Assembly (NCBI GenBank): GCA_030704615.1
Contig: CM060734.1
Coordinates: 39,184,001-39,248,000, forward strand
Direction: 5' to 3'
Origin: Takakia lepidozioides
Lineage: Eukaryota; Plantae; Bryophyta
DNA length: 64,000 bases
A program made the position numbers and the translations under genes. Shown here piece by piece: positions 23,060 through 41,908 of this stretch; within the stretch, counting starts at the first letter, position 1; each line of letters starts with the position of its first letter. The notes beneath the pieces were generated by a model. The model had not been told where the DNA came from. It ran no database searches and saw only the letters and a list, made by a program, of their open reading frames with translations.

Positions 23060-24790
23060 GACACTATGTAAGGCAGGACAGCTGAAAGCGGCATTGCACA
23101 TTTTGAAGCAAGGATCTGTCCGACTCCTGCACTTGTATTTGTGTCCTGCAGGAGTGTATCAAGAGGAATAGCCTAGCAGCAGGGAAGCAGATGCACCCCC
23201 ATATTACTCAAAGTGGATGCAAGCCAAACATCTTTCTATGCCACTCCCTTTATTAACAAGTGCGGGAGTGTGGTGGCTGCACGGCAAATCTTTGACTCAG
23301 TGCCGGAACAAGATCTGTTCACATGGAGTACAATGATAGTTGGATATGCCAAGCATGGGTGTGGGAGGGACACTATTGCGATTTATGAGCAAATGCAATG
23401 GGAAGGGGTGATGCCTAATGGGGTCACGTTCACTTGTGTTGCTAATGCGCGTTCCAGCCTAGGAGCCCTGAAGAAGGGCAAAGAGGTCCATGCTGACATC
23501 ATCCAATCTGGAATTGTACTACAAATCATTCTGGAGACTGCTCTTGCTGATATTTATGCCAAATGTGGGAGCATGAAGGATGCATGCCAAGTATTTGACA
23601 AAATGGCTAACCGAAATGTCATCTCATGGAGTGTGATGATTACAGGATATGCCAAGCATGGGCGTGGTTGGGAGGCTCTTGAGATGTATACAGAAATGCA
23701 ACGGGAAGGGGTGATGCCTGACAAGTGGCCTTCATCAGTGTTCTAGATGCGTGTGGCAGCCTGGCAGTCCTGGAAAAGGCCAAAGAGGTCCATGCTGGCA
23801 TTAAAAAAGCAGGGATTGCAGCAGATGCCACTTTGGAGACTGCCCTTGTTGTCGTATATGCCGATGCGGGAGCATGAAAGATACACATCAAGTGTTCAAT
23901 GGTATGCCCAAGCGAGACGTGGTTTCATGGAGTGCAATGATTGCAGGATATGGTTAGCATGGGTATGGAAATGAGGTCCTCCAGCTATTTGAACAAATGC
24001 AAAGACAAGGGTTGAAGCCGGATGGTATCACCTTCATCTCTCTCTCTCTGCGTGTAGCCATGCGGGCTCATGGATGAAGGCTCTCATTACTTCGAGTCCA
24101 TGAGTCGAGATCTTGGGGTCACTCCTACTCTGCAACATTTTGCTGCATGGTGGACCACCTTGGTCGTGCAGGGCGATTGGATAAGGCAGAGGACTTGAGT
24201 AACAGCATGCCAATAAAACCAGTTGCTTCGGTGTGGGGGGCCTTGCTTGGTGCCTGCAGAGAAGTTATGAGAATGTGAAGCTGGCTGAACATACAGCAAA
24301 TGCCTCCTCAAGTGGGATCCATGGGATGCCGGAATGTATGTGCTGCTCTCAAACATCTATGCTGCAGTTAGCAGGTTGCAGCGATTCTGCAAAGGTGAGA
24401 CGGAGGACAGAGGTATCAAGAAGGTGCCAGGGAGCAGCTGCATTGAGGTGGATAATCAGGTGCATATATTTTTTGTAGAAGACAAAGTGCATCCAAAAAT
24501 TGAGGAAATCCATGCTAACTGAAGAGATTGTCTGGGCAGATGAAGGAGGCTGGATGTATGTCCCTGACACTCGCTTTGTATTGCATGATGTGGAGGAGCA
24601 GCCGAAGGAGTTTTCTCTTGGCCACCACTGAGAAGCTGGCCATTGCCTTTGAACTGATTAGCACACCCCTGGGATACCTATTCACCTCATCAAGAACCTT
24701 CGCGTTTGTGGGGACTGCCACGCCACCACCAAGTTCCATCTCGAAGATCGTTGGGTGAGGGATTGTTGTATGGGATGCCAACTGTTTTCG
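23060..24790 (+). pseudogene. PLS-class PPR-E-DYW RNA-editing factor pseudogene
   Basis: PPR repeats (FTWSTMIVGYAKHG, YAKCGSMKDACQVFDKMANRNVISWSVMI), E/E+ (YVLLSNIYA, KKVPGSSCIEV), DYW part (TEKLAIAF, KNLRVCGDCH..TKFISKI). At least 6 frameshifts or stops; the terminal CSC.DYW is absent. Confidence 0.92.
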
Positions 24791-26741: not shown

Positions 26742-29059
26742 CTATGACTCTATAGTGACAGATTGCTGCCTTTCTTCAGCAGAGTCACCAAACAGATCGT
26801 TATCTTCTACCAATACGGCACTACCGTCTGACAGACTCCTCATCAACTGGGGACCTGCCTCCTTACCACTTTCTGGTGTTTCCTTAGTCTTCGCTTCCTT
26901 AATCCCAGGTGAGGTGCCCTCTTCATCTAAAATTAGCCCATCCCCTGACTTTCGGGCAGGGCCTGCCCAGGAGCCTCCCACAACCCCAGCCACCGAATCC
27001 CCATACAAATCGTCATACAAACCACCTTTCCCAGGAAACTTGACCTTATCCAAATATTGCTGCAATCTTTGAGTGACCGCTGGCAACTTTTCTTTCTCCT
27101 CTTTTCCTTTTGCGTCATCATGACCTTTTGGAATGATTGTGACCTGCACTAAAGACTCATACTTCCCAACCAGACTCCCTTCTCTTACACCCACTGGTCC
27201 TGGCTCCGTGCTAACATCAACACCATCCGAGATACCGACCACTTCAACAAGAACCCCTCCATATTCGTCTCTGAATGTAACCCGTGAATTCCGAGCCCGC
27301 TTTGCAGGCCTTTCAGTCTGCTGTTCTTCCTCTCTTGGTCCCTGTGTTGATCCAGAGGAGCTGGGGAATGGAACTCCAAGTCTGTTGAGCGAGGTGTTGT
27401 AAGAAACTAAAGCCTCTTCATCGGAGGGGTCGGGAGGCGGAGGGTATACAAAATTGGCTGGCACCTGTGAAGCTACCCAAGGCGAAGTTGGGGCATTCTT
27501 TCTCAGAACATAGCTTCGGGTTGATGCCCCAAATCGCAGTGACTGGCCTACTTCCAGTTCTACAGGGTTGTCCTTGGAGAGCCGCTCGTTGGCCACAAAT
27601 GTGCCATGCACAGAGCCAAGATCAATGACGTACACACTGCCATCAGTGGTCACCATAATCACATAAGAAACAGAATACATCGGTGGCTGTAAACTCAATT
27701 CAAACCTCCTTACAACTGTAGAGCCAAGGAATATGAAGTAGGTACAAAATGTTCATGCCTCATCCAGCGTACTCACAACTGCTTCTGGTAATTCATTTTG
27801 GGCTGGACAAGATTGGACTTGATTCCACCATCGTACTCACCCCACATGCCCAGGCCTTTCCACTAGAATTCAAACAATAGATTGGGAATAGACCATACAA
27901 AAGAAAGCCCTTTACCCTCCATTCTTGTGGTGTACGATGACTGCATGCTGCCGAGAGACCGATGGATGATCCAAGACATAATCACACATAACCGCTTGGC
28001 GCCCAAAAAGTGCCCGCCGCTTCTCCAAACATATCTTATCCACAATGCCACCCTCCTTCAGCACTTCCAGAAAATAAATGCCAGGCTTTGGCTCCACCGA
28101 CCAATCAGGCGGCTGCCAGTTGGATCCACCTGATCCTGTCGCTGTGCTTGAGGTCTACATCATGACAATGTTGCGCGGAGGCGCACAATAAGAAAATGTT
28201 AACGCTTCCAGATACTCGCACAATCACTCAAGGCACCTCCAGTTTTTGGAACATATGAAACCCTAGCTGAGTGGTGCATGTGAGGCATAAATTCCGCAGT
28301 TTCAAGAGATTTCAGGGCACTTTCCACGATTTCACAGTGTGTGTGCAGGGGGTTCCCCAGCAATGCCTTTAGATGCGATTGGTACCTCAATGCAATTAAC
28401 AAAAACCTACTTCTTTCCACCAGGGTGACCAGGTTGGGCATTGATAACAAGCTTGGTAAGCTTCTGGAAACTGTTAATGAAGATGACAGTGCAGAGGCCC
28501 TGGCTGCAGCAATCAATGAGAATGCCCTCGTTTTGGCTGAGCTGAAATCTCAGCTGAAAGCAAATGTTAAAAAGGGGCAGCAGCAGCAAGCCAGGGATTA
28601 TGAAAGGAGGCACAAAAAGGGGCATGAGTACAGAGAACTTCCAGCCAATGCCTTGGTCAAGATGCTTAGGCCTGGAAAACGAAGTTCAATGACCAGTCCG
28701 TGGGAAGGGCCCTACTCTTTCTTGGGTTACAAGGATCACAATGATCAAGACAAAGAGATGGAGGCGGAGGGGGATCCCGACAAGATCTACCACAAGATAC
28801 ATCGCTTGGGTAACTCGCAGTATAACCTGGCAGGAGGTGACACCCCTGGGATCGAACTGGAAAACAAACAAATCGTGCCAGACTAAAAAGGACATACCGG
28901 AGGTGGTGCTTGAGCGTCGGCTGCCCCTGAGGTGGGGAGGGCATGTGGCTGTGACTGCTCTTTGCGTAGTGTCTGCTTAACGGAGCCGACAGACTTAACA
29001 GAAAACGGCTCTGCCGATTCAGCCTTCTTAAACCTGTTGAGTCCAAATCTGTTCAACAT
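26742..29059 (-). CDS. FHA-domain protein, NIPP1-like (PP1-docking RVTF motif), copy A, 3 exons
   Basis: Exons 29059-28898, 28154-27916, 27636-26742. WQPPDW, FGRQ..CDYVLDHPSVSRQHA, IDLGSVHGTFV, FGASTRSY, YNT.LN, RVTF, DVSTEPGP. Confidence 0.92.
28420..28880 (+). mobile_element. Ty3/Gypsy integrase C-terminal fragment in intron 1 of FHA copy A
   Basis: ..ANVKKGQQQQARDYERR..ALVKMLRPGK..SPWEGPY is a post-integrase coiled region plus GPY/F motif. Absent from the equivalent intron of copy B. Confidence 0.7.
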
Positions 29060-30302: not shown

Positions 30303-33300
30303 CTATAGCTTGCCTTCTACAACCAATTCTTGATATTGCCTCCAGCCAGCTCGTGTTACAGGCATAACATGTATTCCTGCCACTCCTACACACATCAACT
30401 CAGTGAGCCCTCTTTGCACAATGCAGAGGTGACTTCAGGATGGTTCAACTTTTGTGACCCTTCACAATTACAAGCTAAACTATACTACAGACAAGGAGTT
30501 CGGGGCCACATTTAAGGCAGGTGGAACATAGTTGCAACACAACACTTCAATCACACCCAAACTGCAGAATGTTGAACACACCAGGTAGACGTCTAATAAA
30601 CTTGATCAGCTGGAAACTCTCCTCATGACAAAAACTGGCAAAGGCAACCAGGTCACCAGCATGTTCAGCCTCCACTCTAGTCCATCGAGCTTTGATTGCA
30701 TCTGCTTCCTTTCCTACGAAGACAAAGAAAATTGGTCACATTAAGCAGAACCCTCCATGATATTCTAGGAGGCTATATATCAGTACATAGTCTTGGGTGC
30801 CTTTAACAGAAGGCATACCCTTACAATAATGTTGAATATTGAACTGCCTGTTCGTACAGACCATCTACCACACATACTGTACTGTGCACCTTTGCAATCT
30901 GATCAATTTGGGATCTAGTATTATCAAGTATCCTACTTTTTATTTATCTCCACAAATAACGGCTTTCACGTTCAATCTCTATTCAAATCAAAAGTACAGG
31001 TAAAATCTGCACCTTGTCCACAAAGACCATTCCCATACACAGACCACACGTCCCAAAAATTGCTATGCTCAATTGCAAATTCAGACCTGATGCCCCCGTC
31101 AGCTCAAGCCAGAATGAGAAACTCCGAGATGAAGTCAACAAAGGGAGACCAACAATCACCGGTACTGCCTTTGTCAATCTGATAAACCAAGGCCACATAA
31201 TATCCCATTATCTGAAGCTTTCAACAAATAATATCCTCGTATGTCACAAACATAGCTAGAGTCACGCAGAGCCACAGTAGACTGAAGCAATTGATTTTTC
31301 CTACTTAGCAGACAGGAGATACCAGGAGCTAGGAGTAAGGTAGCATCTGATCCTCCAGAAATAATGCTCATGTAAAGAATGAAGAAGCACATCAGGAAAA
31401 AGGACAATACAAAGGAAACATCCCGCAATGACTCAACAAATCTTCACTATGTCCATGACCATGTCAAAAGAATCACCAAGTTACTGAGGGGTTTGAGAGA
31501 CAGCCAATACCCTCTCTGTCGTGCTTTGCTCCACCACTCCGCAAAACAATCTGGAAGTAAAGGTGGTTGCACTATAACAGCTTCTGCGCCTGCCTCTATC
31601 TAGAAGAGAGAGACATACATTGGTGAACAATAGGTAGTACATAATCACAAAGATTGCAATCAACACGCCCTAGGTTAGATATCCATTAGACAGGCCCACC
31701 TAAATCCAGCTCTTTGTATATGGATAGTAGCTAGAGTTCTAGAGTATCCATGTCTTACAGTAGATATGCTCCACACAAGTAATCAAGATTGTGAGGACAG
31801 ACTTGTACCACTCTATGTGAAACCTAACCAAATGCATACAGCTTGGGTCTTTATATCATGGCTGTCATCCACAAAGGCACCAAATGTCAACCACATCACA
31901 GCTGCAGGCAGTCAAATTATGATGCCCACTGATTTCAACACTCAACACAACTCTCAGATAATTATGAACAGCTTGTTGATAAATTCGAGGAAACTGTTGT
32001 ACAGAAATCTGCACCAGAAGTTTCTTCAACTTTGTCGAAAGTCTAGGAAGCCGCCAACATAACATAGGCAAGAGACATATAACAGATCAGCAAGCTTGTG
32101 AGAAGATCGCTTATAAACACGAAAGGAGACTACATTCGTTTGTGATGATTAGGCAATGACCTTTTTCTCAAGACGTTCAATGGGATTGATGAGGGGATTC
32201 TCCACACACCAGAGCTGCAGTCCTTGCACAATGAACACAATAATGCAGCATGGTTGTTAGCAGCAGTAAGGTATTGGCACTCCTGCCTTGTGATTGTCAG
32301 ATAAGTAATTCTTTCAAGCAAAGCAGCATGTGAGAAGTACGCATCACCGTACACTTGATTGGAAAGACACAACAGTGGTTCACATAGAATTACCAGGCGA
32401 CAATAGACCCCTCTTTCGAAGTTGATGTGCTGCATGTAACATAGCGAATGAATTTGCTGGAAGCAGGTGGTTGGCAAACCAAACTCTTCTCAAGGGGTGT
32501 CCTGCACATGACCACTATGATAAACTGTTATGAAGTTACCACAGAACCTCTGCAGATCATAAAGTGCTGCTGTCATTCTAGGCACACAACAACATCAGAT
32601 CAACAACAGAATGCACAAGCAAATGCCAAAGTGAGCTTTCTCGATAATCATACAAGCGAGCCCTATAAAGCATCTGACAAAGAACTGGTCAGTCCAGATT
32701 TATGACATCATCTAACAGATCTAAACTGGACAGGAAATCACACACTGACAAGTTATGCTGCCAGCTGGCTAGGTCAGATGTCTATCTTCTTTCGACATGT
32801 AACATAACACAAATATGTCAGGCACCTCTAGCTCATGGATTAGAGGCTCCAATTCCTCTGATATTCCCACTTTACAAGTAAATCTTACCTCCAGATAGAA
32901 GTAGCAGAGAGCCTCCACATCCTGCCACCTCAATGTCCCGAGCAGATTTAATCATGCATTCTTGGAGCTCTGGCAGCGATCTCGTTTGAGCAGCAACTGT
33001 TCTCACTTGCCAACAGTTGAAGCCTTGCAAAGTATCAGAAAGCCCCACTTGGCCATCAGACGATGGCCTACATTCTGTTTTCTTCTCAGCTACACTTGTA
33101 AGCCTTAGGCCCATAAGCAATTGCTTTAAATTGAAAGTGTGGAAGTATTCCATCAGAGAAGCTTTGATTGGTAAGTCTGGAGTTACAACCCCATTGATCG
33201 GTCCGAGTGAAGGGCATCTGCATGTCTACACACAAAACCACAGGCTCACAATTAGAATAAAAAGAGATGTATCGACCACAGTGTACAGCGATTCATAGTC

Positions 33301-34209
33301 ATCTCATACCAGAATTTGAGTGGCAACCTAAGTACACTGTACCGAGCAATGTGCTCCTCTAAAAACTTGAGGAAACAACTGACATGGAATCAACGTTAGT
33401 GGCGGCAGACTTATAAATAGACCATAATAGAAAATGTACCCGAGCTGAAACATTGACAATGTATCTTACCCGATTGCCCTAGGTTTCGGAAATTTTTATG
33501 CTTGCTAAGGAAGTTATTTAAGATACTGAAAACAAGAATTCGAGCTCACAAGTTGAATAATATCAACCCCGGAAATCCCTACGAACCACTCTGGAGCGGG
33601 AAAGTACATTCCAACCTCTGAAGCTCTAAATACAACCAAGTCGGTGACAAAACATGACATTGTGAGGATGTAGATTGACCTACTTACAATGTGAAGTGCT
33701 ATCCTCCCCGAGACCTACTTTACAAACTAAAGACCTTTGGCTTTGACATCCTCACATCATTTTGTTAGCCAAAAACTTCTAAAAGTCTCTTTGTATCTAT
33801 ATGCACCATCCTCTTCATCAAAAGCACATAAGTATCATTCACCCTCCAGACGATGCAGGTGGCAGTAACGCTGATCAACTTCGCATCTTTCGGCCAGAAA
33901 ATGACGTACTGATCATCAAATGGGAGGTCCGGCCAGTGAGGAACCACAAAATACGACAATGAAGGGCAAACCTCTTTGCCGACTCTGTGTAAGCTGTGCA
34001 ATGATAGCCGATTCTATTTGAAAACCTGACGACTGACATTTCAATGATCATAATTTGGGGCTTTATAAAGCGTTGTTTAGTTGTACCTGAAGAACAGGGA
34101 GTGAGGACGAGGACGTTGCAGAAGGAAGCTCAAGGAGGCGGACGAAGGCATGCTGCTCAAAGAGCGATGATCGGGCGCCGGCCATGGCCATAGCAGTGGC
34201 CGTAGCCAT
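30303..34209 (-). CDS. Divergent MTHFR/MetF-like FAD-linked oxidoreductase, catalytic barrel only, probable N-terminal transit peptide; 5' exons uncertain
   Basis: Seven phase-consistent GT-AG exons: ~33217/33225-32889, 32501-32394, 32222-32161, 31599-31511, 31178-31087, 30713-30582, 30385-30303. Translation: GVVTPDLP..VRTVAAQTRSLPELQE..SLLLLSGGHPLRR..LQLWCVENP..IERLEKKIEAGAEAVIVQPP..VPVIVGLPLLTSSRSFSFWLELTG..LPGVAGIHVMPVT..*. Candidate first exon 34209-34087 (MATATAMAMAGARSS..); its link to downstream exons is unresolved. Confidence 0.75.
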
Positions 34210-34828: not shown

Positions 34829-35053
34829 TGTTCTCACTTGCCAACGGTTGAAGCCTTGCAAAGTATCAGGAAGCCTCATTTGGCCATCAGACGAGGGCCT
34901 AGCCTACAGTCTGTTTTCTTCTCCCCTCCACTTGTAAGCCTTAGGCCCGGAACCAAGTGCTTTAAATTGAAAGAGTGGAATTATTCGATCATAGAAGCTT
35001 TGATTGCTAAGTCTGGAGTTACAACGTTCATTGATCGCTTCCAGTGAAGGGCC
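34829..35053 (-). pseudogene. Duplicated single-exon fragment of the MTHFR-like gene
   Basis: Aligns with 33000-33215 in the same orientation (ttctcacttgccaac.gttgaagccttgcaaagtatcag...taagtctggagttacaac), with a small insertion. Confidence 0.85.
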
Positions 35054-35609
35054 TCTGCCACACGAAAGGGCCTCTGCACTTTTGTGTGGCGGGATCAAGT
35101 TTGTGTTCTTTGTGCCACCCGCAGCCTCGCAATGTAACATGAATTCTAACATTAGCTGCGATTAATTTAGTGCAATATGTACTTCTGAATTAAGTTCCCA
35201 CATTCATGCCTGTGAATTTCCCAGACGTTTCTTGAAATGCATTGGGAGTTGACGAATCACGATTGCAAAAGTGCATGCATACTTAGTGAGAGACGAGCAT
35301 CCCACGCTGGTGCTAGTCTGAAGGACGAGGCACTGTGGCTCGGACCGAGTGCGAGGTTCGGGGCGCCGAAGCAATGCGAGCCGGCAGTTCCACCTCGGTC
35401 GGCCTCCCGAGTGTAGCATTGGTATGGCCTCGCAACGCTGCACTCCACCCACCCCGCGACAATTCCTAGGGCGACAATTCCAAGGGCCTGTAGGTACTCC
35501 GTCTGAGCTTTCCATGCCAGTCGGCCCCCACCTCATGCTTCTCATTCCTTTGCTGCTGTGTACTTTTCGGACGCTGGAGCGATCGCGGAGCACCACGTGC
35601 GCACGCTGC

Positions 35610-36395
35610 TATACATCGAAAGATTCTAAAGCCCGGGAGAATATTCCATAGCCCGAGACAATATTCCATAGCCTAGGACATGCAATGTCTCGGGGTTTTG
35701 TTCCTCAAAAAGAATAACTTTCAACTAAAGAAAGTTGTCGTATCCCACATGCCTCCTGTATCCTATGGGAACGTAAGGGAACATTTTGTGGCCCGAGAGT
35801 GAGCCTTGGACCGGGCCTGGGGTATTTCATGAATCTTTCTAGCCTAGGACAGATTCCTAAAATGATTCTATAGCATAGGCTGGGTCTAGGGTCCAGGGCT
35901 ATCTTATCGCATATACAATTGTCCATACAGTAAACAACTGATCCGTTTATATGATAAGATAGCCCTGGACCCTAGGCCCGAGCCTAGGGTATGAAATCAT
36001 AGGCTAGAAAGATTCCTGAAATACCCCCCCCCCGTGTGCAAGGCTCACTTGCCGGCCACAAAATGTCCCCTTACGTTCCCATAGGATACCCTAGGGCACT
36101 CGGTAGCCCCAGGGAAGGCCCAAAAATTCGGGAATGCCCTCCACTCAAGGCATTACACTGCATAAAGCACGTGCAACAAAAAGGTACAAAAAGGTACGGC
36201 GGGCATTACAGGGGAGTGTAATGCCCCGCCCGCCAAGCGATGAATTCTGGTTTTTGACGGCACGATAAATACAAAGAGAAAAAATGCAAAGTGCTTTATG
36301 AGGAACAAAACCCCCAGACATTGCATGTCCTGGGCTATGGAATATTGTCCCGAGCTTTGGAATCATTAGCCCGGGCTTTGGAATCTTTCAATGTA
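35610..36395. mobile_element. Nested fold-back/MITE-like elements: outer ~95-bp inverted arms (35610-35706 / 36298-36395), inner ~160-bp arms (35758-35920 / 35945-36089)
   Basis: gtatcctatgggaacgtaagggga vs tccccttacgttcccataggatac; ggacatgcaatgtctcggggttttgttcctca vs tgaggaacaaaacccccagacattgcatgtcc. Confidence 0.85.
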
Positions 36396-36628
36396 TGGCT
36401 CGTTTTCCATTCCATCCGCCTCGTCTTCTCCGCCATCGCTGCATCTTCTCCGCCATCGTTGTCTGAGCACCACATTTTAGGCAGCCAGAGAAGGTCACAC
36501 TCTTGTGCGATCTCTAGTTTGCTTGCGGAGGGGAAATAGCATTGTTGTAGGTTCTGAGAGGAAGGATCACCGTGCTTTTCTGAAAGACAGCTGTGTTTTC
36601 TAGTCGAGTTGGTGGAAGGGAAGTCGGA

Positions 36629-39600: not shown

Positions 39601-41908
39601 GGTTTCTGCTACAATCTTGAAGTCTATCTGTGCAGGGCTGTTTGTTGCTCGCTAGTAGAGTCACAATTGTGCCACGTTTTTCTTCTGTTGTTTCCATCCC
39701 TTATCTCACCATTGTAGAATTGCCAGTTCAAAAGGTGTGGGGAGTCCCAACCAAACCCACTGCAACAGGCCTCTAGTATCATTGGATCAGATGTGGTTTG
39801 CAAGACAATTTGGAAGCCACCTGGAGATCACATGGAGAATGAAGTATCTGTAGGTTATTGCATGTCACTCCTTGTTGCTCTGAGGCAGAGGGAGCACAGG
39901 GAGTTACATAAAATGCAGGGTTTTGTTATTTGCAGTTTCTGTCCATATAACCCAGATATAAAAGGCCAGAGTGTGAGTCGTCTTCACCTAGGACAATGAA
40001 GCTGGTGGTCCAGTTTAGGTTCGAGCATAAATCAGATGTTTATGTATACGATTCATTCTGACACCCTGAATCCTATATAAAAGAGTTGTATAACTTTGAG
40101 AGGAAGGCTGAATGGAATATAACAGGTACAAATATGATCAGGGCACCTTTGTGGATACATTTATTTATATTGGATAATTTGTAGATGTTTGGGAACCATA
40201 TCCTTAGCTGGTGTGATCTGTAGGGCACTCTGATGTTCATAACGTCTTGTCGGGTTGTCAGTTGCTTCCTTCAAAATGAAACTCTGGGCTTTGGTCATCA
40301 AACTGTAACAAATATGTGAAGTAACTGAGCAAGAACTGCAACTGGACTTTCTTTTCTGGTCAATCAGCTCAAAGAGTGTGTGGTGATATTCTGCATCAAT
40401 GTGGTTTGGAGGATTGTAGACAAAGCTTGCACAGGATGTTCAAATGTCTAGCTATTATATGATGTGTGATGCAGTGACTTAGAGTGGCTCCCTCTGGACT
40501 ACTTGTCCAGTGTGGCCATCTCTAAGGCATCAGACTTTGGTATATTTGGAAATCGAGATGATTTTTCTTGTTCGAAGCTAAGTGTTCTTACATAAATGAA
40601 GCACTTCATAGGATGTCACCTTTTTACATGGCTGTTCACACTAATTTGGAGTCGGGTTGGATCTCTGCTGAACAGTCATGAGCTGCTTCTGTTTGAGGCC
40701 CTCCGAGAAGGACTGGAGGAGGAGATGGACAGAGATCCCAAAGTATGTGTGATCGGAGAAGATGTTGGTCACTATGGCGGCTCCTACAAGGTCACCAAGG
40801 GCTTTGCTGAGAAGTTCGGGGATTTGAGACTGCTAGACACCCCCATTGCTGAAAACTCTTTCACTGGGATGGCCATTGGTGCTGCCATGACAGGTCTGCG
40901 GCCGGTAATTGAGGGCATGAACATGGGTTTTCTTCTCTTGGCCTACAACCAGATTGCAAACAACTGCGGTATGCTTCATTACACCTCAGGAGGGCAGTTC
41001 ACAATTCCTGTTGTTATCAGGGGTCCCGGAGGAGTGGGCCGGCAGCTGGGTGCAGAACACTCACAGCGTCTCGAATCTTACTTCCAATCAGTTCCAGGGC
41101 TGCAGATGGTGGCTTGTTCCACCCCATACAATGCCAAGGGGTTGATGAAGGCTGCCATCCGCAGTGAGAACCCTGTGATACTGTTCGAGCATGTGCTTTT
41201 GTACAACCTGAAGGAGAGGATTCCAGATGAGGAGTACACATGCTCCCTGGAGGAGGCTGAGCTAGTGCGGCCTGGGGAGGATATCACCATCCTCACCTAC
41301 TCCCGCATGAGATACCATGTGACGCAGGTGTGTCTTCGTTCCTCTTCTTTGTCTTTCACTTTTCAAAATTCCTCGCTTCTCATTTTTTTTAACATTAGTC
41401 TGGAGTGTTTTGGCTAGTCTTCAGCTTTTTACTTCTTGTCAGATGTCTGTATTTTAAAGAGTAAATTCCTATAGTGCTTAACAGGCTGCTTGAATATATT
41501 CATAGGAGATCACTATAGTGGCAGGTGAGGTACTACATTATTGGTGACGAACATATGTGGTCTATTGGATTGTGATGGCAGGCTGCCAAGACTCTGGTGA
41601 ACAAGGGTTATGACCCAGAGATTATTGACATCCGCTCATTGAAGCCATTTGACATGTACACAATTGGCCAGTCAGTCAAGAAAACTCACCGTGTGCTGAT
41701 TGTGGAGGAGTGCATGCGAACTGGAGGCATCGGTGCTAGCCTGCGAGCTGCTATCATGGAGAACTTTTTTGATTACCTTGATGCTCCTATCGGATGTCTT
41801 TCCTCCCAGGATGTACCAACTCCATACTCTGGGCCATTGGAGGAGTTAACAGTGGTTCAACCTCCCCAGATTGTGGCTGCTGTTGAACAGTTGTGCTCAA
41901 GAGAGTAA
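36629..41908 (+). CDS. PDH-E1beta: Plastid pyruvate dehydrogenase E1 beta subunit, 5 exons
   Basis: Exons 36629-36752, 37338-37447, 37781-37821, 40676-41327, 41582-41908. Ser/Ala-rich transit peptide, then [68 protein letters not shown]. Confidence 0.96.
36987..37250 (+). mobile_element. 5'-truncated copy of the (CT)n-tailed LINE family in PDH intron 1, 11-bp TSD
   Basis: Homologous to the reverse complement of 18428-18690. TSD tctcactctct at 36976-36986 and 37251-37261. Confidence 0.85.
38100..38870 (-). pseudogene. Aromatic L-amino-acid (Tyr/Trp) decarboxylase 5' fragment nested antisense in PDH intron 3
   Basis: Exon ~38860-38762 [32 protein letters not shown]|gt and exon 38321-38249 ag|[24 protein letters not shown]|gt match the group II PLP decarboxylase N-terminus (FIAD deleted). 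The rest is missing. Confidence 0.82.

What the first reader, a model, noticed from the sequence alone, without database searches (positions are those of the whole stretch)
30303..34209. Non-canonical, probably organelle-targeted MTHFR/MetF-like gene hidden in small exons
Seen: seven exons, most too small for the ORF track, splice in frame with canonical sites. They give a protein with the MetF barrel motif order (VTPDLP; LLLLSGGHP; VENP; RLEKKIEAGAEAVIVQP; VPVIVGLP; GVAGIHVMP) that stops right after the barrel. Known: characterised land-plant MTHFRs are cytosolic and carry a long C-terminal domain, while plastids have a methionine synthase that needs 5-methyl-THF. Positions matching E. coli MetF Gln183 and His273 appear retained, but the HLT His and the LRGD Asp appear replaced (VRTVAAQ, LSGGH). 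Inference: this is a separate, little-described flavoprotein family, possibly a plastid or mitochondrial one-carbon enzyme or a neofunctionalised oxidoreductase. The Ala/Ser-rich first exon and the divergent position next to plastid PDH-E1beta are suggestive only. The 5' exons do not join cleanly (a possible 16-nt micro-exon near 33343-33358, a possible frameshift in exon 1), so this copy may be decaying.
Basis: partly seen in the sequence, partly recalled or inferred. Interest (0 to 1): 0.8.

Follow-up and report, generated by a model that had tools for sequence, protein, structure and literature searches.

The report
Divergent short MTHFR-like gene in moss
This is an intact eight-exon moss gene for a short, single-domain enzyme barrel distantly related to methylenetetrahydrofolate reductase; its uncharacterised family occurs in green algae, bryophytes and conifers but was not found in flowering plants, and it has lost several residues that the classical enzyme needs.

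Summary
It lies on the minus strand at 34209-30303. It has eight GT-AG exons, not seven, which join in frame to 341 codons. No micro-exon or frameshift is needed.

All exons are colinear with Ceratodon purpureus KC19_5G085000 (77% identical) and with Physcomitrium patens LOC112277145, so the window is moss DNA. dN/dS against a close relative is 0.19, so the copy is not decaying.

The protein belongs to the MTHFR superfamily:
- Pfam MTHFR is the only hit, just under threshold for the mosses.
- hhalign against canonical MetF gives 95.9% probability.
- The AlphaFold model of the Ceratodon orthologue is a (βα)8 barrel. Its best PDB matches are all MTHFRs (Z 22), ahead of flavin-free mycobacterial reductases (Z 18).

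The counterparts of E. coli Glu28, Lys172, Gln183, Phe223 (here Trp) and His273 are kept. Those of His88, Arg118 and Asp120 are replaced.

The family occurs in chlorophytes, Mesotaenium, liverworts, mosses and conifers. I found no angiosperm member, no prokaryotic member and no paper on it.

Organelle targeting is not supported for this copy, which has only about 15 residues before the conserved core. The joined spliced model was neither searched nor folded.

The parts
34087..34209 (-). Exon 1: start codon at 34209, 41 codons, ends in phase 0. It encodes the short Ala/Thr/Met-rich N-terminus and strand beta-1 (LLELP). Glu27 (codon 34131-34129) is the counterpart of E. coli MetF Glu28.
   Evidence: It is 92% identical to L002 and 78% to P0012 residues 21-61. 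An in-frame stop lies 9 nt upstream of the ATG.
32889..33225 (-). Exon 2: 337 nt, starts in phase 0. It encodes strands beta-2 (VVTPDLP), beta-3 (WQVRTVAAQ) and beta-4 (LLLLSGG), plus a variable, low-confidence helical insert.
   Evidence: It is conserved as one exon in L002 (67%) and Sphagnum (45%), and maps to P0012 residues 62-173.
32394..32501 (-). Exon 3: 108 nt, encoding HPLRRVWFANHLLPANSFAMLHAAHQLRKRGLLSP.
   Evidence: It is 89% identical to P0012 residues 175-209.
32161..32222 (-). Exon 4: 62 nt, encoding strand beta-5 (LQLWCVENPL...RLEKK). The productive acceptor is cAAG|GA at 32222. A second acceptor 8 nt downstream (gCAG|CTCTGG) breaks the frame.
   Evidence: Annotated and transcript-derived proteins P0008, P0012 and P0014 use the in-frame junction. 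P0011 and L003 use the frame-breaking one.
31511..31599 (-). Exon 5: 89 nt, encoding IEAGAEAVIVQPPLL. Gly214 is the counterpart of MetF Gly176, and Gln221 the counterpart of Gln183. The counterpart of Lys172 is Lys210, the last codon of exon 4.
31087..31178 (-). Exon 6: 92 nt, encoding strand beta-7 (VPVIVGLPLLTSS) and the FW motif. Trp263 is the counterpart of MetF Phe223.
30582..30713 (-). Exon 7: 132 nt, encoding helix alpha-7 and the following helices. It is the least conserved exon.
   Evidence: In the Sphagnum contig L001 exons 6 and 7 lie in one continuous reading frame (protein P0007), which confirms the junction. The genomic Sphagnum loci L005 and L007-L009 keep this intron.
30303..30385 (-). 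Exon 8: 83 nt including the stop codon, encoding strand beta-8 (VAGIHVMPVT) and the last helix. His320 is the counterpart of MetF His273.
34829..35058 (-). Dead partial duplicate of the first two-thirds of exon 2, in the same orientation, 620-850 bp upstream of the start codon. It is not part of the coding gene.
   Evidence: 87% identical to 32998-33221, with indels and stops. Absent from the L002 locus.

Best explanation
A functional, single-copy moss nuclear gene encodes a 341-residue, single-domain (βα)8-barrel protein. It belongs to a green-lineage branch of the methylenetetrahydrofolate reductase (MTHFR/MetF) superfamily that nobody has characterised.

Shown: the gene model, its conservation under purifying selection, homology to MTHFR over the C-terminal half, and a predicted fold closest to MTHFR over the whole barrel.

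Inferred: the protein binds a reduced folate or pterin at the C-terminal face of the barrel. It would use the retained general-acid Glu on beta-1, the Gln on beta-6 and an aromatic residue (Trp) in the position of Phe223, and would carry out a methylene/methyl-tetrahydrofolate-type redox step.

The canonical Asp120, Arg118 and His88 are replaced by Gly, Ser and Thr, and a new invariant PD(L/I)P loop follows beta-2. Its folate grip and its hydride carrier (FAD, or direct NAD(P)H as in mycobacterial Mfr) therefore probably differ from classical MetF.

An alternative acceptor 8 nt downstream at exon 4 yields frame-broken transcripts, which may limit how much protein is made.
For: Gene model:
- Eight GT-AG exons sum to 1026 nt in frame.
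- The exon peptides are colinear with Ceratodon P0012, 260 of 336 residues identical, with exactly one split-codon residue at each phase-1 or phase-2 junction.
- The same exon order is found in L002 and in the Sphagnum loci.
- dN/dS is 0.19.
- The productive junctions are seen in transcript-derived proteins P0014 and P0040.

Family:
- Pfam MTHFR is the only family hit. Scores are 19.6-22.9 bits for mosses and 28.3 for Mesotaenium against a cut-off of 24, and 17 of 22 members hit.
- NCBIfam gives only MTHFR models, weakly.
- A PDB profile search puts human and Thermus MTHFR on top.
- hhalign of the family against nine canonical MetF sequences gives 95.9% probability, E 6e-9, over 146 columns.

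Fold:
- The AlphaFold2 model of P0012 has pLDDT 81.9 and pTM 0.79, with eight strands.
- The top 50 Foldseek hits are all MTHFR.
- VIA-align gives Z 19-22 for FAD-dependent MTHFRs, rmsd about 3 Å over 250-269 residues. It gives Z 18 for the flavin-free MSMEG_6649 and Mfr, and Z 15 for Mer.

Residues:
- Lys172, Gly176, Gln183, Phe223 (as Trp) and His273 align to invariant family columns.
- Glu28 matches Glu47 of P0012, from the start of the structural alignment (model 41 to MetF 22) and the LELP/FEFFPP motifs.
- The roles of Glu28, Asp120, Gln183 and Phe223 are taken from PMC11094777.
Against: - No activity, cofactor or localisation data exist for any member.
- The N-terminal half has no significant sequence match to MTHFR, so its residue mapping rests on the predicted structure and on motif matching.
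- Asp120 is lost. In E. coli, Asp120Asn leaves 0.3% of kcat (PMC11094777). Arg118 and His88, invariant in my set of nine MetF sequences, are also lost. The protein may therefore not reduce methylene-THF at all.
- The structure was predicted for the Ceratodon orthologue, not for the window's own joined model.
- Three assembled transcripts from two lineages carry a frame-broken exon 3/4 junction.
Confidence: 0.72

Rival explanations
1. It is an ordinary FAD-dependent MetF-type MTHFR, sent to the plastid or mitochondrion, that supplies 5-methyl-THF to an organellar methionine synthase.
For: The fold is closest to FAD-dependent MTHFRs. The alpha-5 K-x-x-x-G-A motif, which in MetF carries FAD contacts (from my own knowledge of the 1B5T structure), is kept. 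Relatives in algae and conifers have 30-96 residue basic presequences with few acidic residues.
Against: His88, Arg118 and Asp120, invariant in nine canonical MetF sequences, are replaced by Thr, Ser and Gly, which are themselves nearly invariant in the family. The window protein has only about 15 residues ahead of the core, with an in-frame stop just upstream. No prokaryotic genome carries the family's motifs, so a recent endosymbiont origin is not visible. No angiosperm member was found, so it cannot explain the angiosperm plastid puzzle.
Confidence: 0.15
2. It is a flavin-independent reductase that transfers hydride directly from NAD(P)H to methylene-THF, working like mycobacterial Mfr/MSMEG_6649 although it arose from the MTHFR stem independently.
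For: The canonical flavin/folate-site residues are lost while the shared catalytic Glu, the Gln and a hydrophobic or aromatic residue at position B are kept. That is the same set that Mfr shares with MTHFR (PMC11094777). In Mfr the acidic 'position D' residue (Glu55) lies early in the chain, and this family has an invariant Asp in the PD(L/I)P loop after beta-2. Mfr structures match at Z 18.
Against: Canonical MTHFRs match better than Mfr in structure (Z 22 against 18). They are also the only sequence hits, as no Mfr chain appears in the profile search of the PDB. The role of the PDLP Asp is a guess.
Confidence: 0.2
3. It is a neofunctionalised barrel that no longer acts on methylene-THF. It could be a folate- or pterin-binding protein, or an oxidoreductase for another substrate.
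For: Asp120 is lost. Pfam scores are sub-threshold. A lineage-variable, low-confidence insert of about 45 residues lies between beta-2 and beta-3. PDB 3ijd, an uncharacterised MetF-like protein that binds 5-methyl-THF, matches at Z 18.5.
Against: The catalytic Glu, the Gln and the His are strictly conserved from chlorophytes to conifers, which argues for retained chemistry at the same site.
Confidence: 0.2
4. This copy is a decaying pseudogene.
For: A dead fragment of exon 2 lies upstream. Frame-broken transcripts exist in relatives.
Against: The reading frame is intact across eight exons with canonical splice sites. dN/dS is 0.19. The gene is colinear over its full length with annotated orthologues.
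Confidence: 0.03

Closest known systems
FAD-dependent MTHFR / MetF (Pfam PF02219; E. coli MetF, Thermus MTHFR, catalytic domain of human and yeast MTHFR)
   Same: It has a (βα)8 barrel of the same size and strand order. It gives the best structural matches (Z 19-22). Profile-profile homology is 95.9% over the C-terminal half. The counterparts of Glu28, Lys172, Gly176, Gln183 and His273 are kept, and the aromatic at Phe223 is kept as Trp. It is a single domain like bacterial MetF.
   Different: Sequence identity is 10-15%. Pfam scores are below the gathering threshold for the moss proteins. The N-terminal half is unrecognisable by sequence. His88, Arg118 and Asp120 are replaced by Thr, Ser and Gly. 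The family has its own invariant motifs (PD(L/I)P, QVRTVAAQ, SGGHP, VENP, QPPLL, HVMP). An insert lies between beta-2 and beta-3. It lacks the C-terminal regulatory domain of the classical eukaryotic and plant MTHFRs.
Flavin-independent methylene-THF reductases of mycobacteria (Mfr of M. hassiacum, PDB 8bgr; MSMEG_6649, PDB 7wmw/7wmx/7wmz)
   Same: It is a short single-domain barrel that has lost canonical flavin-site residues while keeping the catalytic Glu and the Gln. The structural match is Z 18.
   Different: There is no detectable sequence similarity. Its structure is less similar than that of FAD-dependent MTHFRs. The family is eukaryotic (green lineage) rather than actinobacterial. Flavin independence is not shown here.
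Classical plant MTHFR (Arabidopsis MTHFR1/2 type)
   Same: Same superfamily and the same presumed substrate class.
   Different: The classical enzymes are about 600 residues long, with a C-terminal domain, and are predicted to be cytosolic across algae and land plants (PMC6451014). That survey does not mention this family. This protein has 341 residues and no second domain.

Membership tests
MTHFR superfamily (PF02219 fold and homology) | (βα)8 barrel whose nearest solved structures are MTHFRs | tested here: met
   AlphaFold2 model of orthologue P0012: pLDDT 81.9, eight strands. The Foldseek top 50 are all MTHFR, E about 1e-10. VIA-align gives Z 22.4, rmsd 3.0 Å over 260 residues. Tested on the orthologue, not on the joined window model.
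MTHFR superfamily (PF02219 fold and homology) | Significant sequence or profile similarity to MTHFR | tested here: met
   hhalign of the family against nine MetF sequences: 95.9%, E 6.3e-9, over the C-terminal half only. PDB profile search: human MTHFR at E 0.003.
MTHFR superfamily (PF02219 fold and homology) | Pfam PF02219 score above the gathering threshold (24 bits) | tested here: inconclusive
   Moss proteins score 19.6-22.9 bits, below the cut-off. Mesotaenium P0015 scores 28.3, above it. 17 of 22 members hit at E < 0.01 and no other family hits. Single exons of the window give nothing.
Canonical FAD-dependent MetF/MTHFR enzyme | General-acid Glu on beta-1 (E. coli Glu28) | tested here: met
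   The LLELP Glu is Glu27 in the window and Glu47 in P0012, and is conserved in every member that has an N-terminus. The structural alignment starts at model 41 against MetF 22, which places Glu47 on Glu28.
Canonical FAD-dependent MetF/MTHFR enzyme | Asp120 of the LRGD motif (folate N3/NH2 ligand next to the flavin) | tested here: not met
   LLLLSGG aligns without gaps to IVALRGD, so Asp120 becomes Gly and Arg118 becomes Ser. Both are nearly invariant in the family.
Canonical FAD-dependent MetF/MTHFR enzyme | His88 of the HLT motif on beta-3 (invariant in nine MetF sequences) | tested here: not met
   Beta-3 reads QVRTVAAQ. Matching the following helix (PEL against DEL) puts Thr at the His position. 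The mapping comes from motif and secondary-structure matching, not from a significant alignment.
Canonical FAD-dependent MetF/MTHFR enzyme | Gln183, His273, Lys172/Gly176 and an aromatic at Phe223 | tested here: met
   They align to invariant or nearly invariant Gln, His, Lys, Gly and Trp.
Canonical FAD-dependent MetF/MTHFR enzyme | Bound FAD and NAD(P)H:methylene-THF oxidoreductase activity | not testable with these tools
   Needs purified protein.
Flavin-independent Mfr family (mycobacteria) | Sequence membership in the Mfr/MSMEG_6649 family | tested here: not met
   No Mfr chain appears among the PDB profile hits at E up to 10. There is structural similarity only, at Z 18, below the canonical MTHFRs.
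Organelle-targeted protein | N-terminal transit or presequence ahead of the mature domain | tested here: inconclusive
   The window protein has about 15 residues before the core, and a stop 9 nt upstream of the ATG. Relatives in other lineages have 33-96 residue basic presequences. No targeting predictor was available.

The most novel reading that the evidence does not exclude
The family is an ancestral green-lineage methylene-THF reductase with a rebuilt active site. It would either be flavin-independent like mycobacterial Mfr or use a different electron donor. It would work alongside the classical cytosolic MTHFR, in an organelle at least in algae and conifers, and would have been lost in flowering plants.
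Probability: 0.25. Interest if true: 0.75.

Novelty: new variant of a known kind. Interest (0 to 1): 0.55.

Why it matters
Plant one-carbon metabolism is modelled with a single, cytosolic, two-domain MTHFR. A survey of folate enzymes across algae and land plants (PMC6451014) reports only that type. A second, short, strongly conserved MTHFR-like protein would be an unrecognised player in folate or methyl-group metabolism. It is present from chlorophytes to conifers and was not found in angiosperms, which may be why Arabidopsis-centred work has missed it.

Its altered active site makes it a natural experiment on how this barrel binds folate and flavin, next to the recently described flavin-free bacterial enzymes. 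It is directly testable: P. patens has one orthologue (LOC112277145) and efficient gene targeting.

For this window itself, the result is that the gene is real, intact and orthologous to proteins already deposited in databases but uncharacterised.

Tried and rejected
- Pfam on single exons or stop-free stretches of the window gave no MTHFR hit. The pieces are too short.
- A PDB phmmer search with one exon found nothing. A PDB phmmer search with full-length P0012 found only a chance ribosomal-protein hit.
- A word search with exon 7 found nothing, because of the length filter.
- I spent the one big HMMER search on exon 7. It turned out to be the least conserved exon and returned only ORF fragments and one spurious repeat protein, P0004. 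The fragments were still the way in to loci L001 and L002.
- I took 32998-33221 for a transposon-like repeat that would make VTPDLP spurious. I rejected this once the stretch proved to be conserved coding exon in Sphagnum and L002.
I rejected both because orthologues have no residues between exon 1 and exon 2.
- I considered programmed frameshifting to explain the frame-broken transcripts. I rejected it because the shift is +1 in one lineage and -1 in the other, while an in-frame AAG|GA acceptor is conserved and is used in annotated and transcript-derived proteins.
- Two scans of 185,579 prokaryotic genomes with family motifs found no relatives. These scans are limited to the chosen patterns, so they are not proof of absence.
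- Global hhalign gave no reliable alignment of the N-terminal half beyond the beta-4 motif.
- Literature searches by accession numbers, and for a short or plastid plant MTHFR, found nothing.
- Exons were searched by reference, and the 77%-identical Ceratodon protein stood in for it.
Full report
**Observation.** The region 30303-34209 was read on the minus strand.

Exact borders were fixed by motif position and splice consensus. There are eight exons:
- exon 1, 34209-34087
- exon 2, 33225-32889
- exon 3, 32501-32394
- exon 4, 32222-32161
- exon 5, 31599-31511
- exon 6, 31178-31087
- exon 7, 30713-30582
- exon 8, 30385-30303

Their lengths (123, 337, 108, 62, 89, 92, 132 and 83 nt) sum to 1026 nt, which is 341 codons plus a stop. 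The intron phases are compatible at every junction.

In fact exon 1 ends in phase 0 and joins directly to the acceptor at 33225. An in-frame stop 9 nt upstream of the ATG rules out a longer N-terminus within that exon.

**A false lead.** The stretch 32998-33221, which contains VTPDLP and part of VRTVAAQ, recurs at 34829-35058 with 87% identity. I first took it for a dispersed repeat. The comparative data reversed that. The same peptide, in the same frame and joined to the same downstream motifs, is encoded in Sphagnum and in a closer relative. The copy inside the gene is therefore true exon. The upstream copy, which carries indels and stops, is a dead partial duplicate of exon 2.

**Finding relatives.**
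- Single exons gave nothing in Pfam or the PDB, and nothing in the length-filtered word search.
- The one exhaustive HMMER search, run with exon 7, returned ORF-call fragments from plant contigs.
- The contigs of two of those fragments, P0007 and P0001, were fetched as L001 and L002. Both hold all eight exons in order.
- An alignment of exon 2 peptides was used to scan JGI metagenomes. It found eight more loci, three of them spliced transcripts.
- A stop-free 256-residue stretch of transcript L010 then reached full-length database proteins. A family alignment reached 29 in all.

**Identity of the gene.** The window's exon peptides map colinearly and completely onto Ceratodon purpureus hypothetical protein KC19_5G085000 (P0012, 361 aa). 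260 of 336 residues are identical, and exactly one split-codon residue lies between exons at each phase-1 or phase-2 junction. The Physcomitrium patens orthologue is LOC112277145 / A9TUK6, named 'uncharacterized protein' and seen on more than 100 transcript contigs. The window is therefore moss DNA, which agrees with earlier notes of this scan on the same genome.

Against L002, summed per exon, dS is 0.66, dN is 0.13 and dN/dS is 0.19. This copy is under purifying selection and is not decaying.

**Distribution.** The hits are:
- mosses: Ceratodon, Physcomitrium and several Sphagnum species
- liverworts: Calypogeia and Riccia
- conifers: Cryptomeria and Taxus
- the zygnematophyte Mesotaenium
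- trebouxiophyte green algae: Trebouxia and Myrmecia
- several unnamed transcriptome or metagenome proteins

No angiosperm protein appeared, although the collection holds NCBI and UniRef. Since conifer proteins at 42-48% identity were found, loss in flowering plants is the likely reading. It is not proven, because the search depends on shared words.

Two pattern scans of 185,579 prokaryotic genomes with the family's signature motifs found nothing.

Source names are 'uncharacterized', 'hypothetical', or the automatic 'Methylenetetrahydrofolate reductase (NAD(P)H)'. No paper mentions any accession. The survey of folate enzymes across algae and land plants describes only the classical, cytosolic MTHFR (PMC6451014).

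**Family assignment.**
- Pfam MTHFR (PF02219) is the only family hit. The C-terminal halves of two transcripts score 22-23 bits. Full-length moss proteins score 19.6-21.9, against a cut-off of 24. Mesotaenium scores 28.3. In all, 17 of 22 members hit at E < 0.01.
- NCBIfam gives only MTHFR models, far below their cut-offs.
- A profile of the family against PDB sequences puts human MTHFR first (E 0.003), then Thermus MTHFR.
- hhalign of the family against nine canonical MetF sequences (E. coli plus eight taken from plasmid records) gives 95.9% probability and E 6.3e-9 over 146 columns. It covers beta-5 to beta-8.
- The N-terminal half is not alignable by sequence.

**Structure.** AlphaFold2 was run on P0012 with the 22-sequence family alignment. 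The model has mean pLDDT 81.9 and pTM 0.79, with eight strands alternating with helices. The first 28 residues are disordered, and there is a low-confidence insert at about residues 85-130.

The top 50 Foldseek hits in the PDB are all MTHFRs. By VIA-align:
- FAD-dependent MTHFRs lead at Z 19.2-22.4, with rmsd about 3 Å over 243-269 residues.
- The flavin-free MSMEG_6649 and Mfr follow at Z 17.6-18.8.
- The uncharacterised 5-methyl-THF-binding Cthe_2304 scores 18.5.
- Sphingobium MTHFR scores 16.5.
- F420-dependent Mer scores about 15.
- Luciferase-like barrels score about 13-14.

The fold is thus nearest to classical MTHFR over the whole barrel, although the margin over the other methylene-pterin reductases is moderate.

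**Active site.** E. coli numbering was checked on the MG1655 sequence.

| E. coli MetF | Window protein | Status | Basis |
|---|---|---|---|
| Glu28 | Glu27 | kept | structural alignment starts at model 41 = MetF 22; LELP/FEFFPP motifs |
| Lys172 | Lys210 | kept | |
| Gly176 | Gly214 | kept | |
| Gln183 | Gln221 | kept | |
| Phe223 | Trp263 | kept as an aromatic | |
| His273 | His320 | kept | |
| Arg118 | Ser152 | lost | LLLLSGG against IVALRGD, no gaps |
| Asp120 | Gly154 | lost | same alignment |
| His88 | Thr117 | lost | beta-3 reads QVRTVAAQ; motif and helix matching |

All three lost residues are invariant in my canonical set, and their replacements are nearly invariant in the new family.

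According to PMC11094777, Glu28, Phe223, Gln183 and Asp120 are the four functional positions shared by MTHFR, Mfr and Mer. Asp120Asn leaves 0.3% of kcat in E. coli. In Mfr the acidic residue at that spatial position comes from elsewhere in the chain and is not strictly conserved.

The new family has its own invariant Pro-Asp in the loop after beta-2, the PD(L/I)P motif. My suggestion that this Asp substitutes for Asp120 is an inference only.

**Mechanism.** The most likely reading is a folate- or pterin-dependent oxidoreductase. It would use the conserved Glu/Gln/aromatic triad at the barrel mouth, with a changed pterin anchor and an uncertain hydride carrier.
- Retention of the alpha-5 Lys and the G-A motif speaks for a bound dinucleotide.
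- Loss of Arg118, Asp120 and His88 speaks against a canonical FAD site.

I cannot decide between FAD and direct NAD(P)H use with these tools.

**Targeting.** The window protein has about 15 residues (MATATAMAMAGARSS) before the first conserved element. P. patens has 18. Cryptomeria, Mesotaenium, an unnamed conifer-like transcriptome protein (P0019) and the chlorophyte proteins have 33-96 residue basic presequences that are poor in acidic residues. Organelle targeting is therefore plausible for parts of the family but is not supported for this copy.

The neighbouring pyruvate dehydrogenase E1-beta-like gene (Transket_pyr domain, 40596-41417) is real. It says nothing about the function of this gene.

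**Splicing.** Exon 4 has two acceptors 8 nt apart (tgtgcAAG|GActgCAG|CTCTGG), conserved in L002. The upstream one is in frame, and is the one used in annotated and transcript-derived full-length proteins. The downstream one breaks the frame, and is seen in P0011 and L003. Sphagnum transcripts L006 and L010 use yet another acceptor, 20 nt upstream, which is also frame-breaking. Unproductive splicing at this junction thus recurs across mosses.

**Verdict.** The 'decaying copy' part is refuted. The 'organelle-targeted flavoprotein' part is unproven.

The gene is an orthologue of proteins already deposited but uncharacterised. The family itself appears undescribed in the literature I could search.

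Noticed in passing
window 34829-35058 (minus strand sense): A dead partial duplicate of the first two-thirds of exon 2 lies 620-850 bp upstream of the start codon, in the same orientation. It is 87% identical, with a 5-nt and a 1-nt insertion and stops. The related locus L002 has no such copy.
   Followed up: partly
window 35608-35712 / 36294-36399 and 35758-36089: An inverted-repeat pair (89% over 106 nt) flanks a roughly 330-nt self-complementary stretch (75%), just upstream of the exon 2 fragment. It looks like a foldback or MITE-type element. Other notes on this genome report transposons that capture gene fragments, so it might have carried the exon 2 fragment. I did not test this.
   Followed up: no
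window 32222 and 32214 (exon 4 acceptors); L003:1210-1225; L010:885-909; L006:905-935: Tandem acceptors at exon 4 are conserved between the window and L002. Assembled transcripts from a related moss (L003, P0011) and from Sphagnum (L006, L010) use frame-breaking acceptors, 8 nt downstream and 20 nt upstream respectively. This suggests recurrent unproductive splicing at this junction.
   Followed up: partly
L001 (JGI 3300056956 contig, 3708 nt): A Sphagnum contig ends in a poly(A) run. Exons 6 and 7 are joined but the other introns are retained, so it looks like a partly spliced polyadenylated pre-mRNA captured in a peat metatranscriptome.
   Followed up: no
P0022 (Cryptomeria japonica LOC131051153 isoform X2): The annotated conifer isoform X2 lacks the exon 3 equivalent (309 aa against 344 aa). 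This is another sign of alternative processing around exons 3 and 4 in this family.
   Followed up: no
window 40596-41417 (+), 26742-27698 (-), 23213-23746 (+): Neighbouring ORFs carry a transketolase pyrimidine-binding domain (pyruvate dehydrogenase E1-beta-like, E 5e-43), an FHA domain and PPR repeats. This is ordinary plant gene content and is not linked to the finding.
   Followed up: partly
P0004 (1726 aa): A long, highly repetitive Ala/Asp/Leu/Arg-rich protein hit exon 7 at E 7e-7 with no aligned stretch reported. I take it as a compositional false positive.
   Followed up: no
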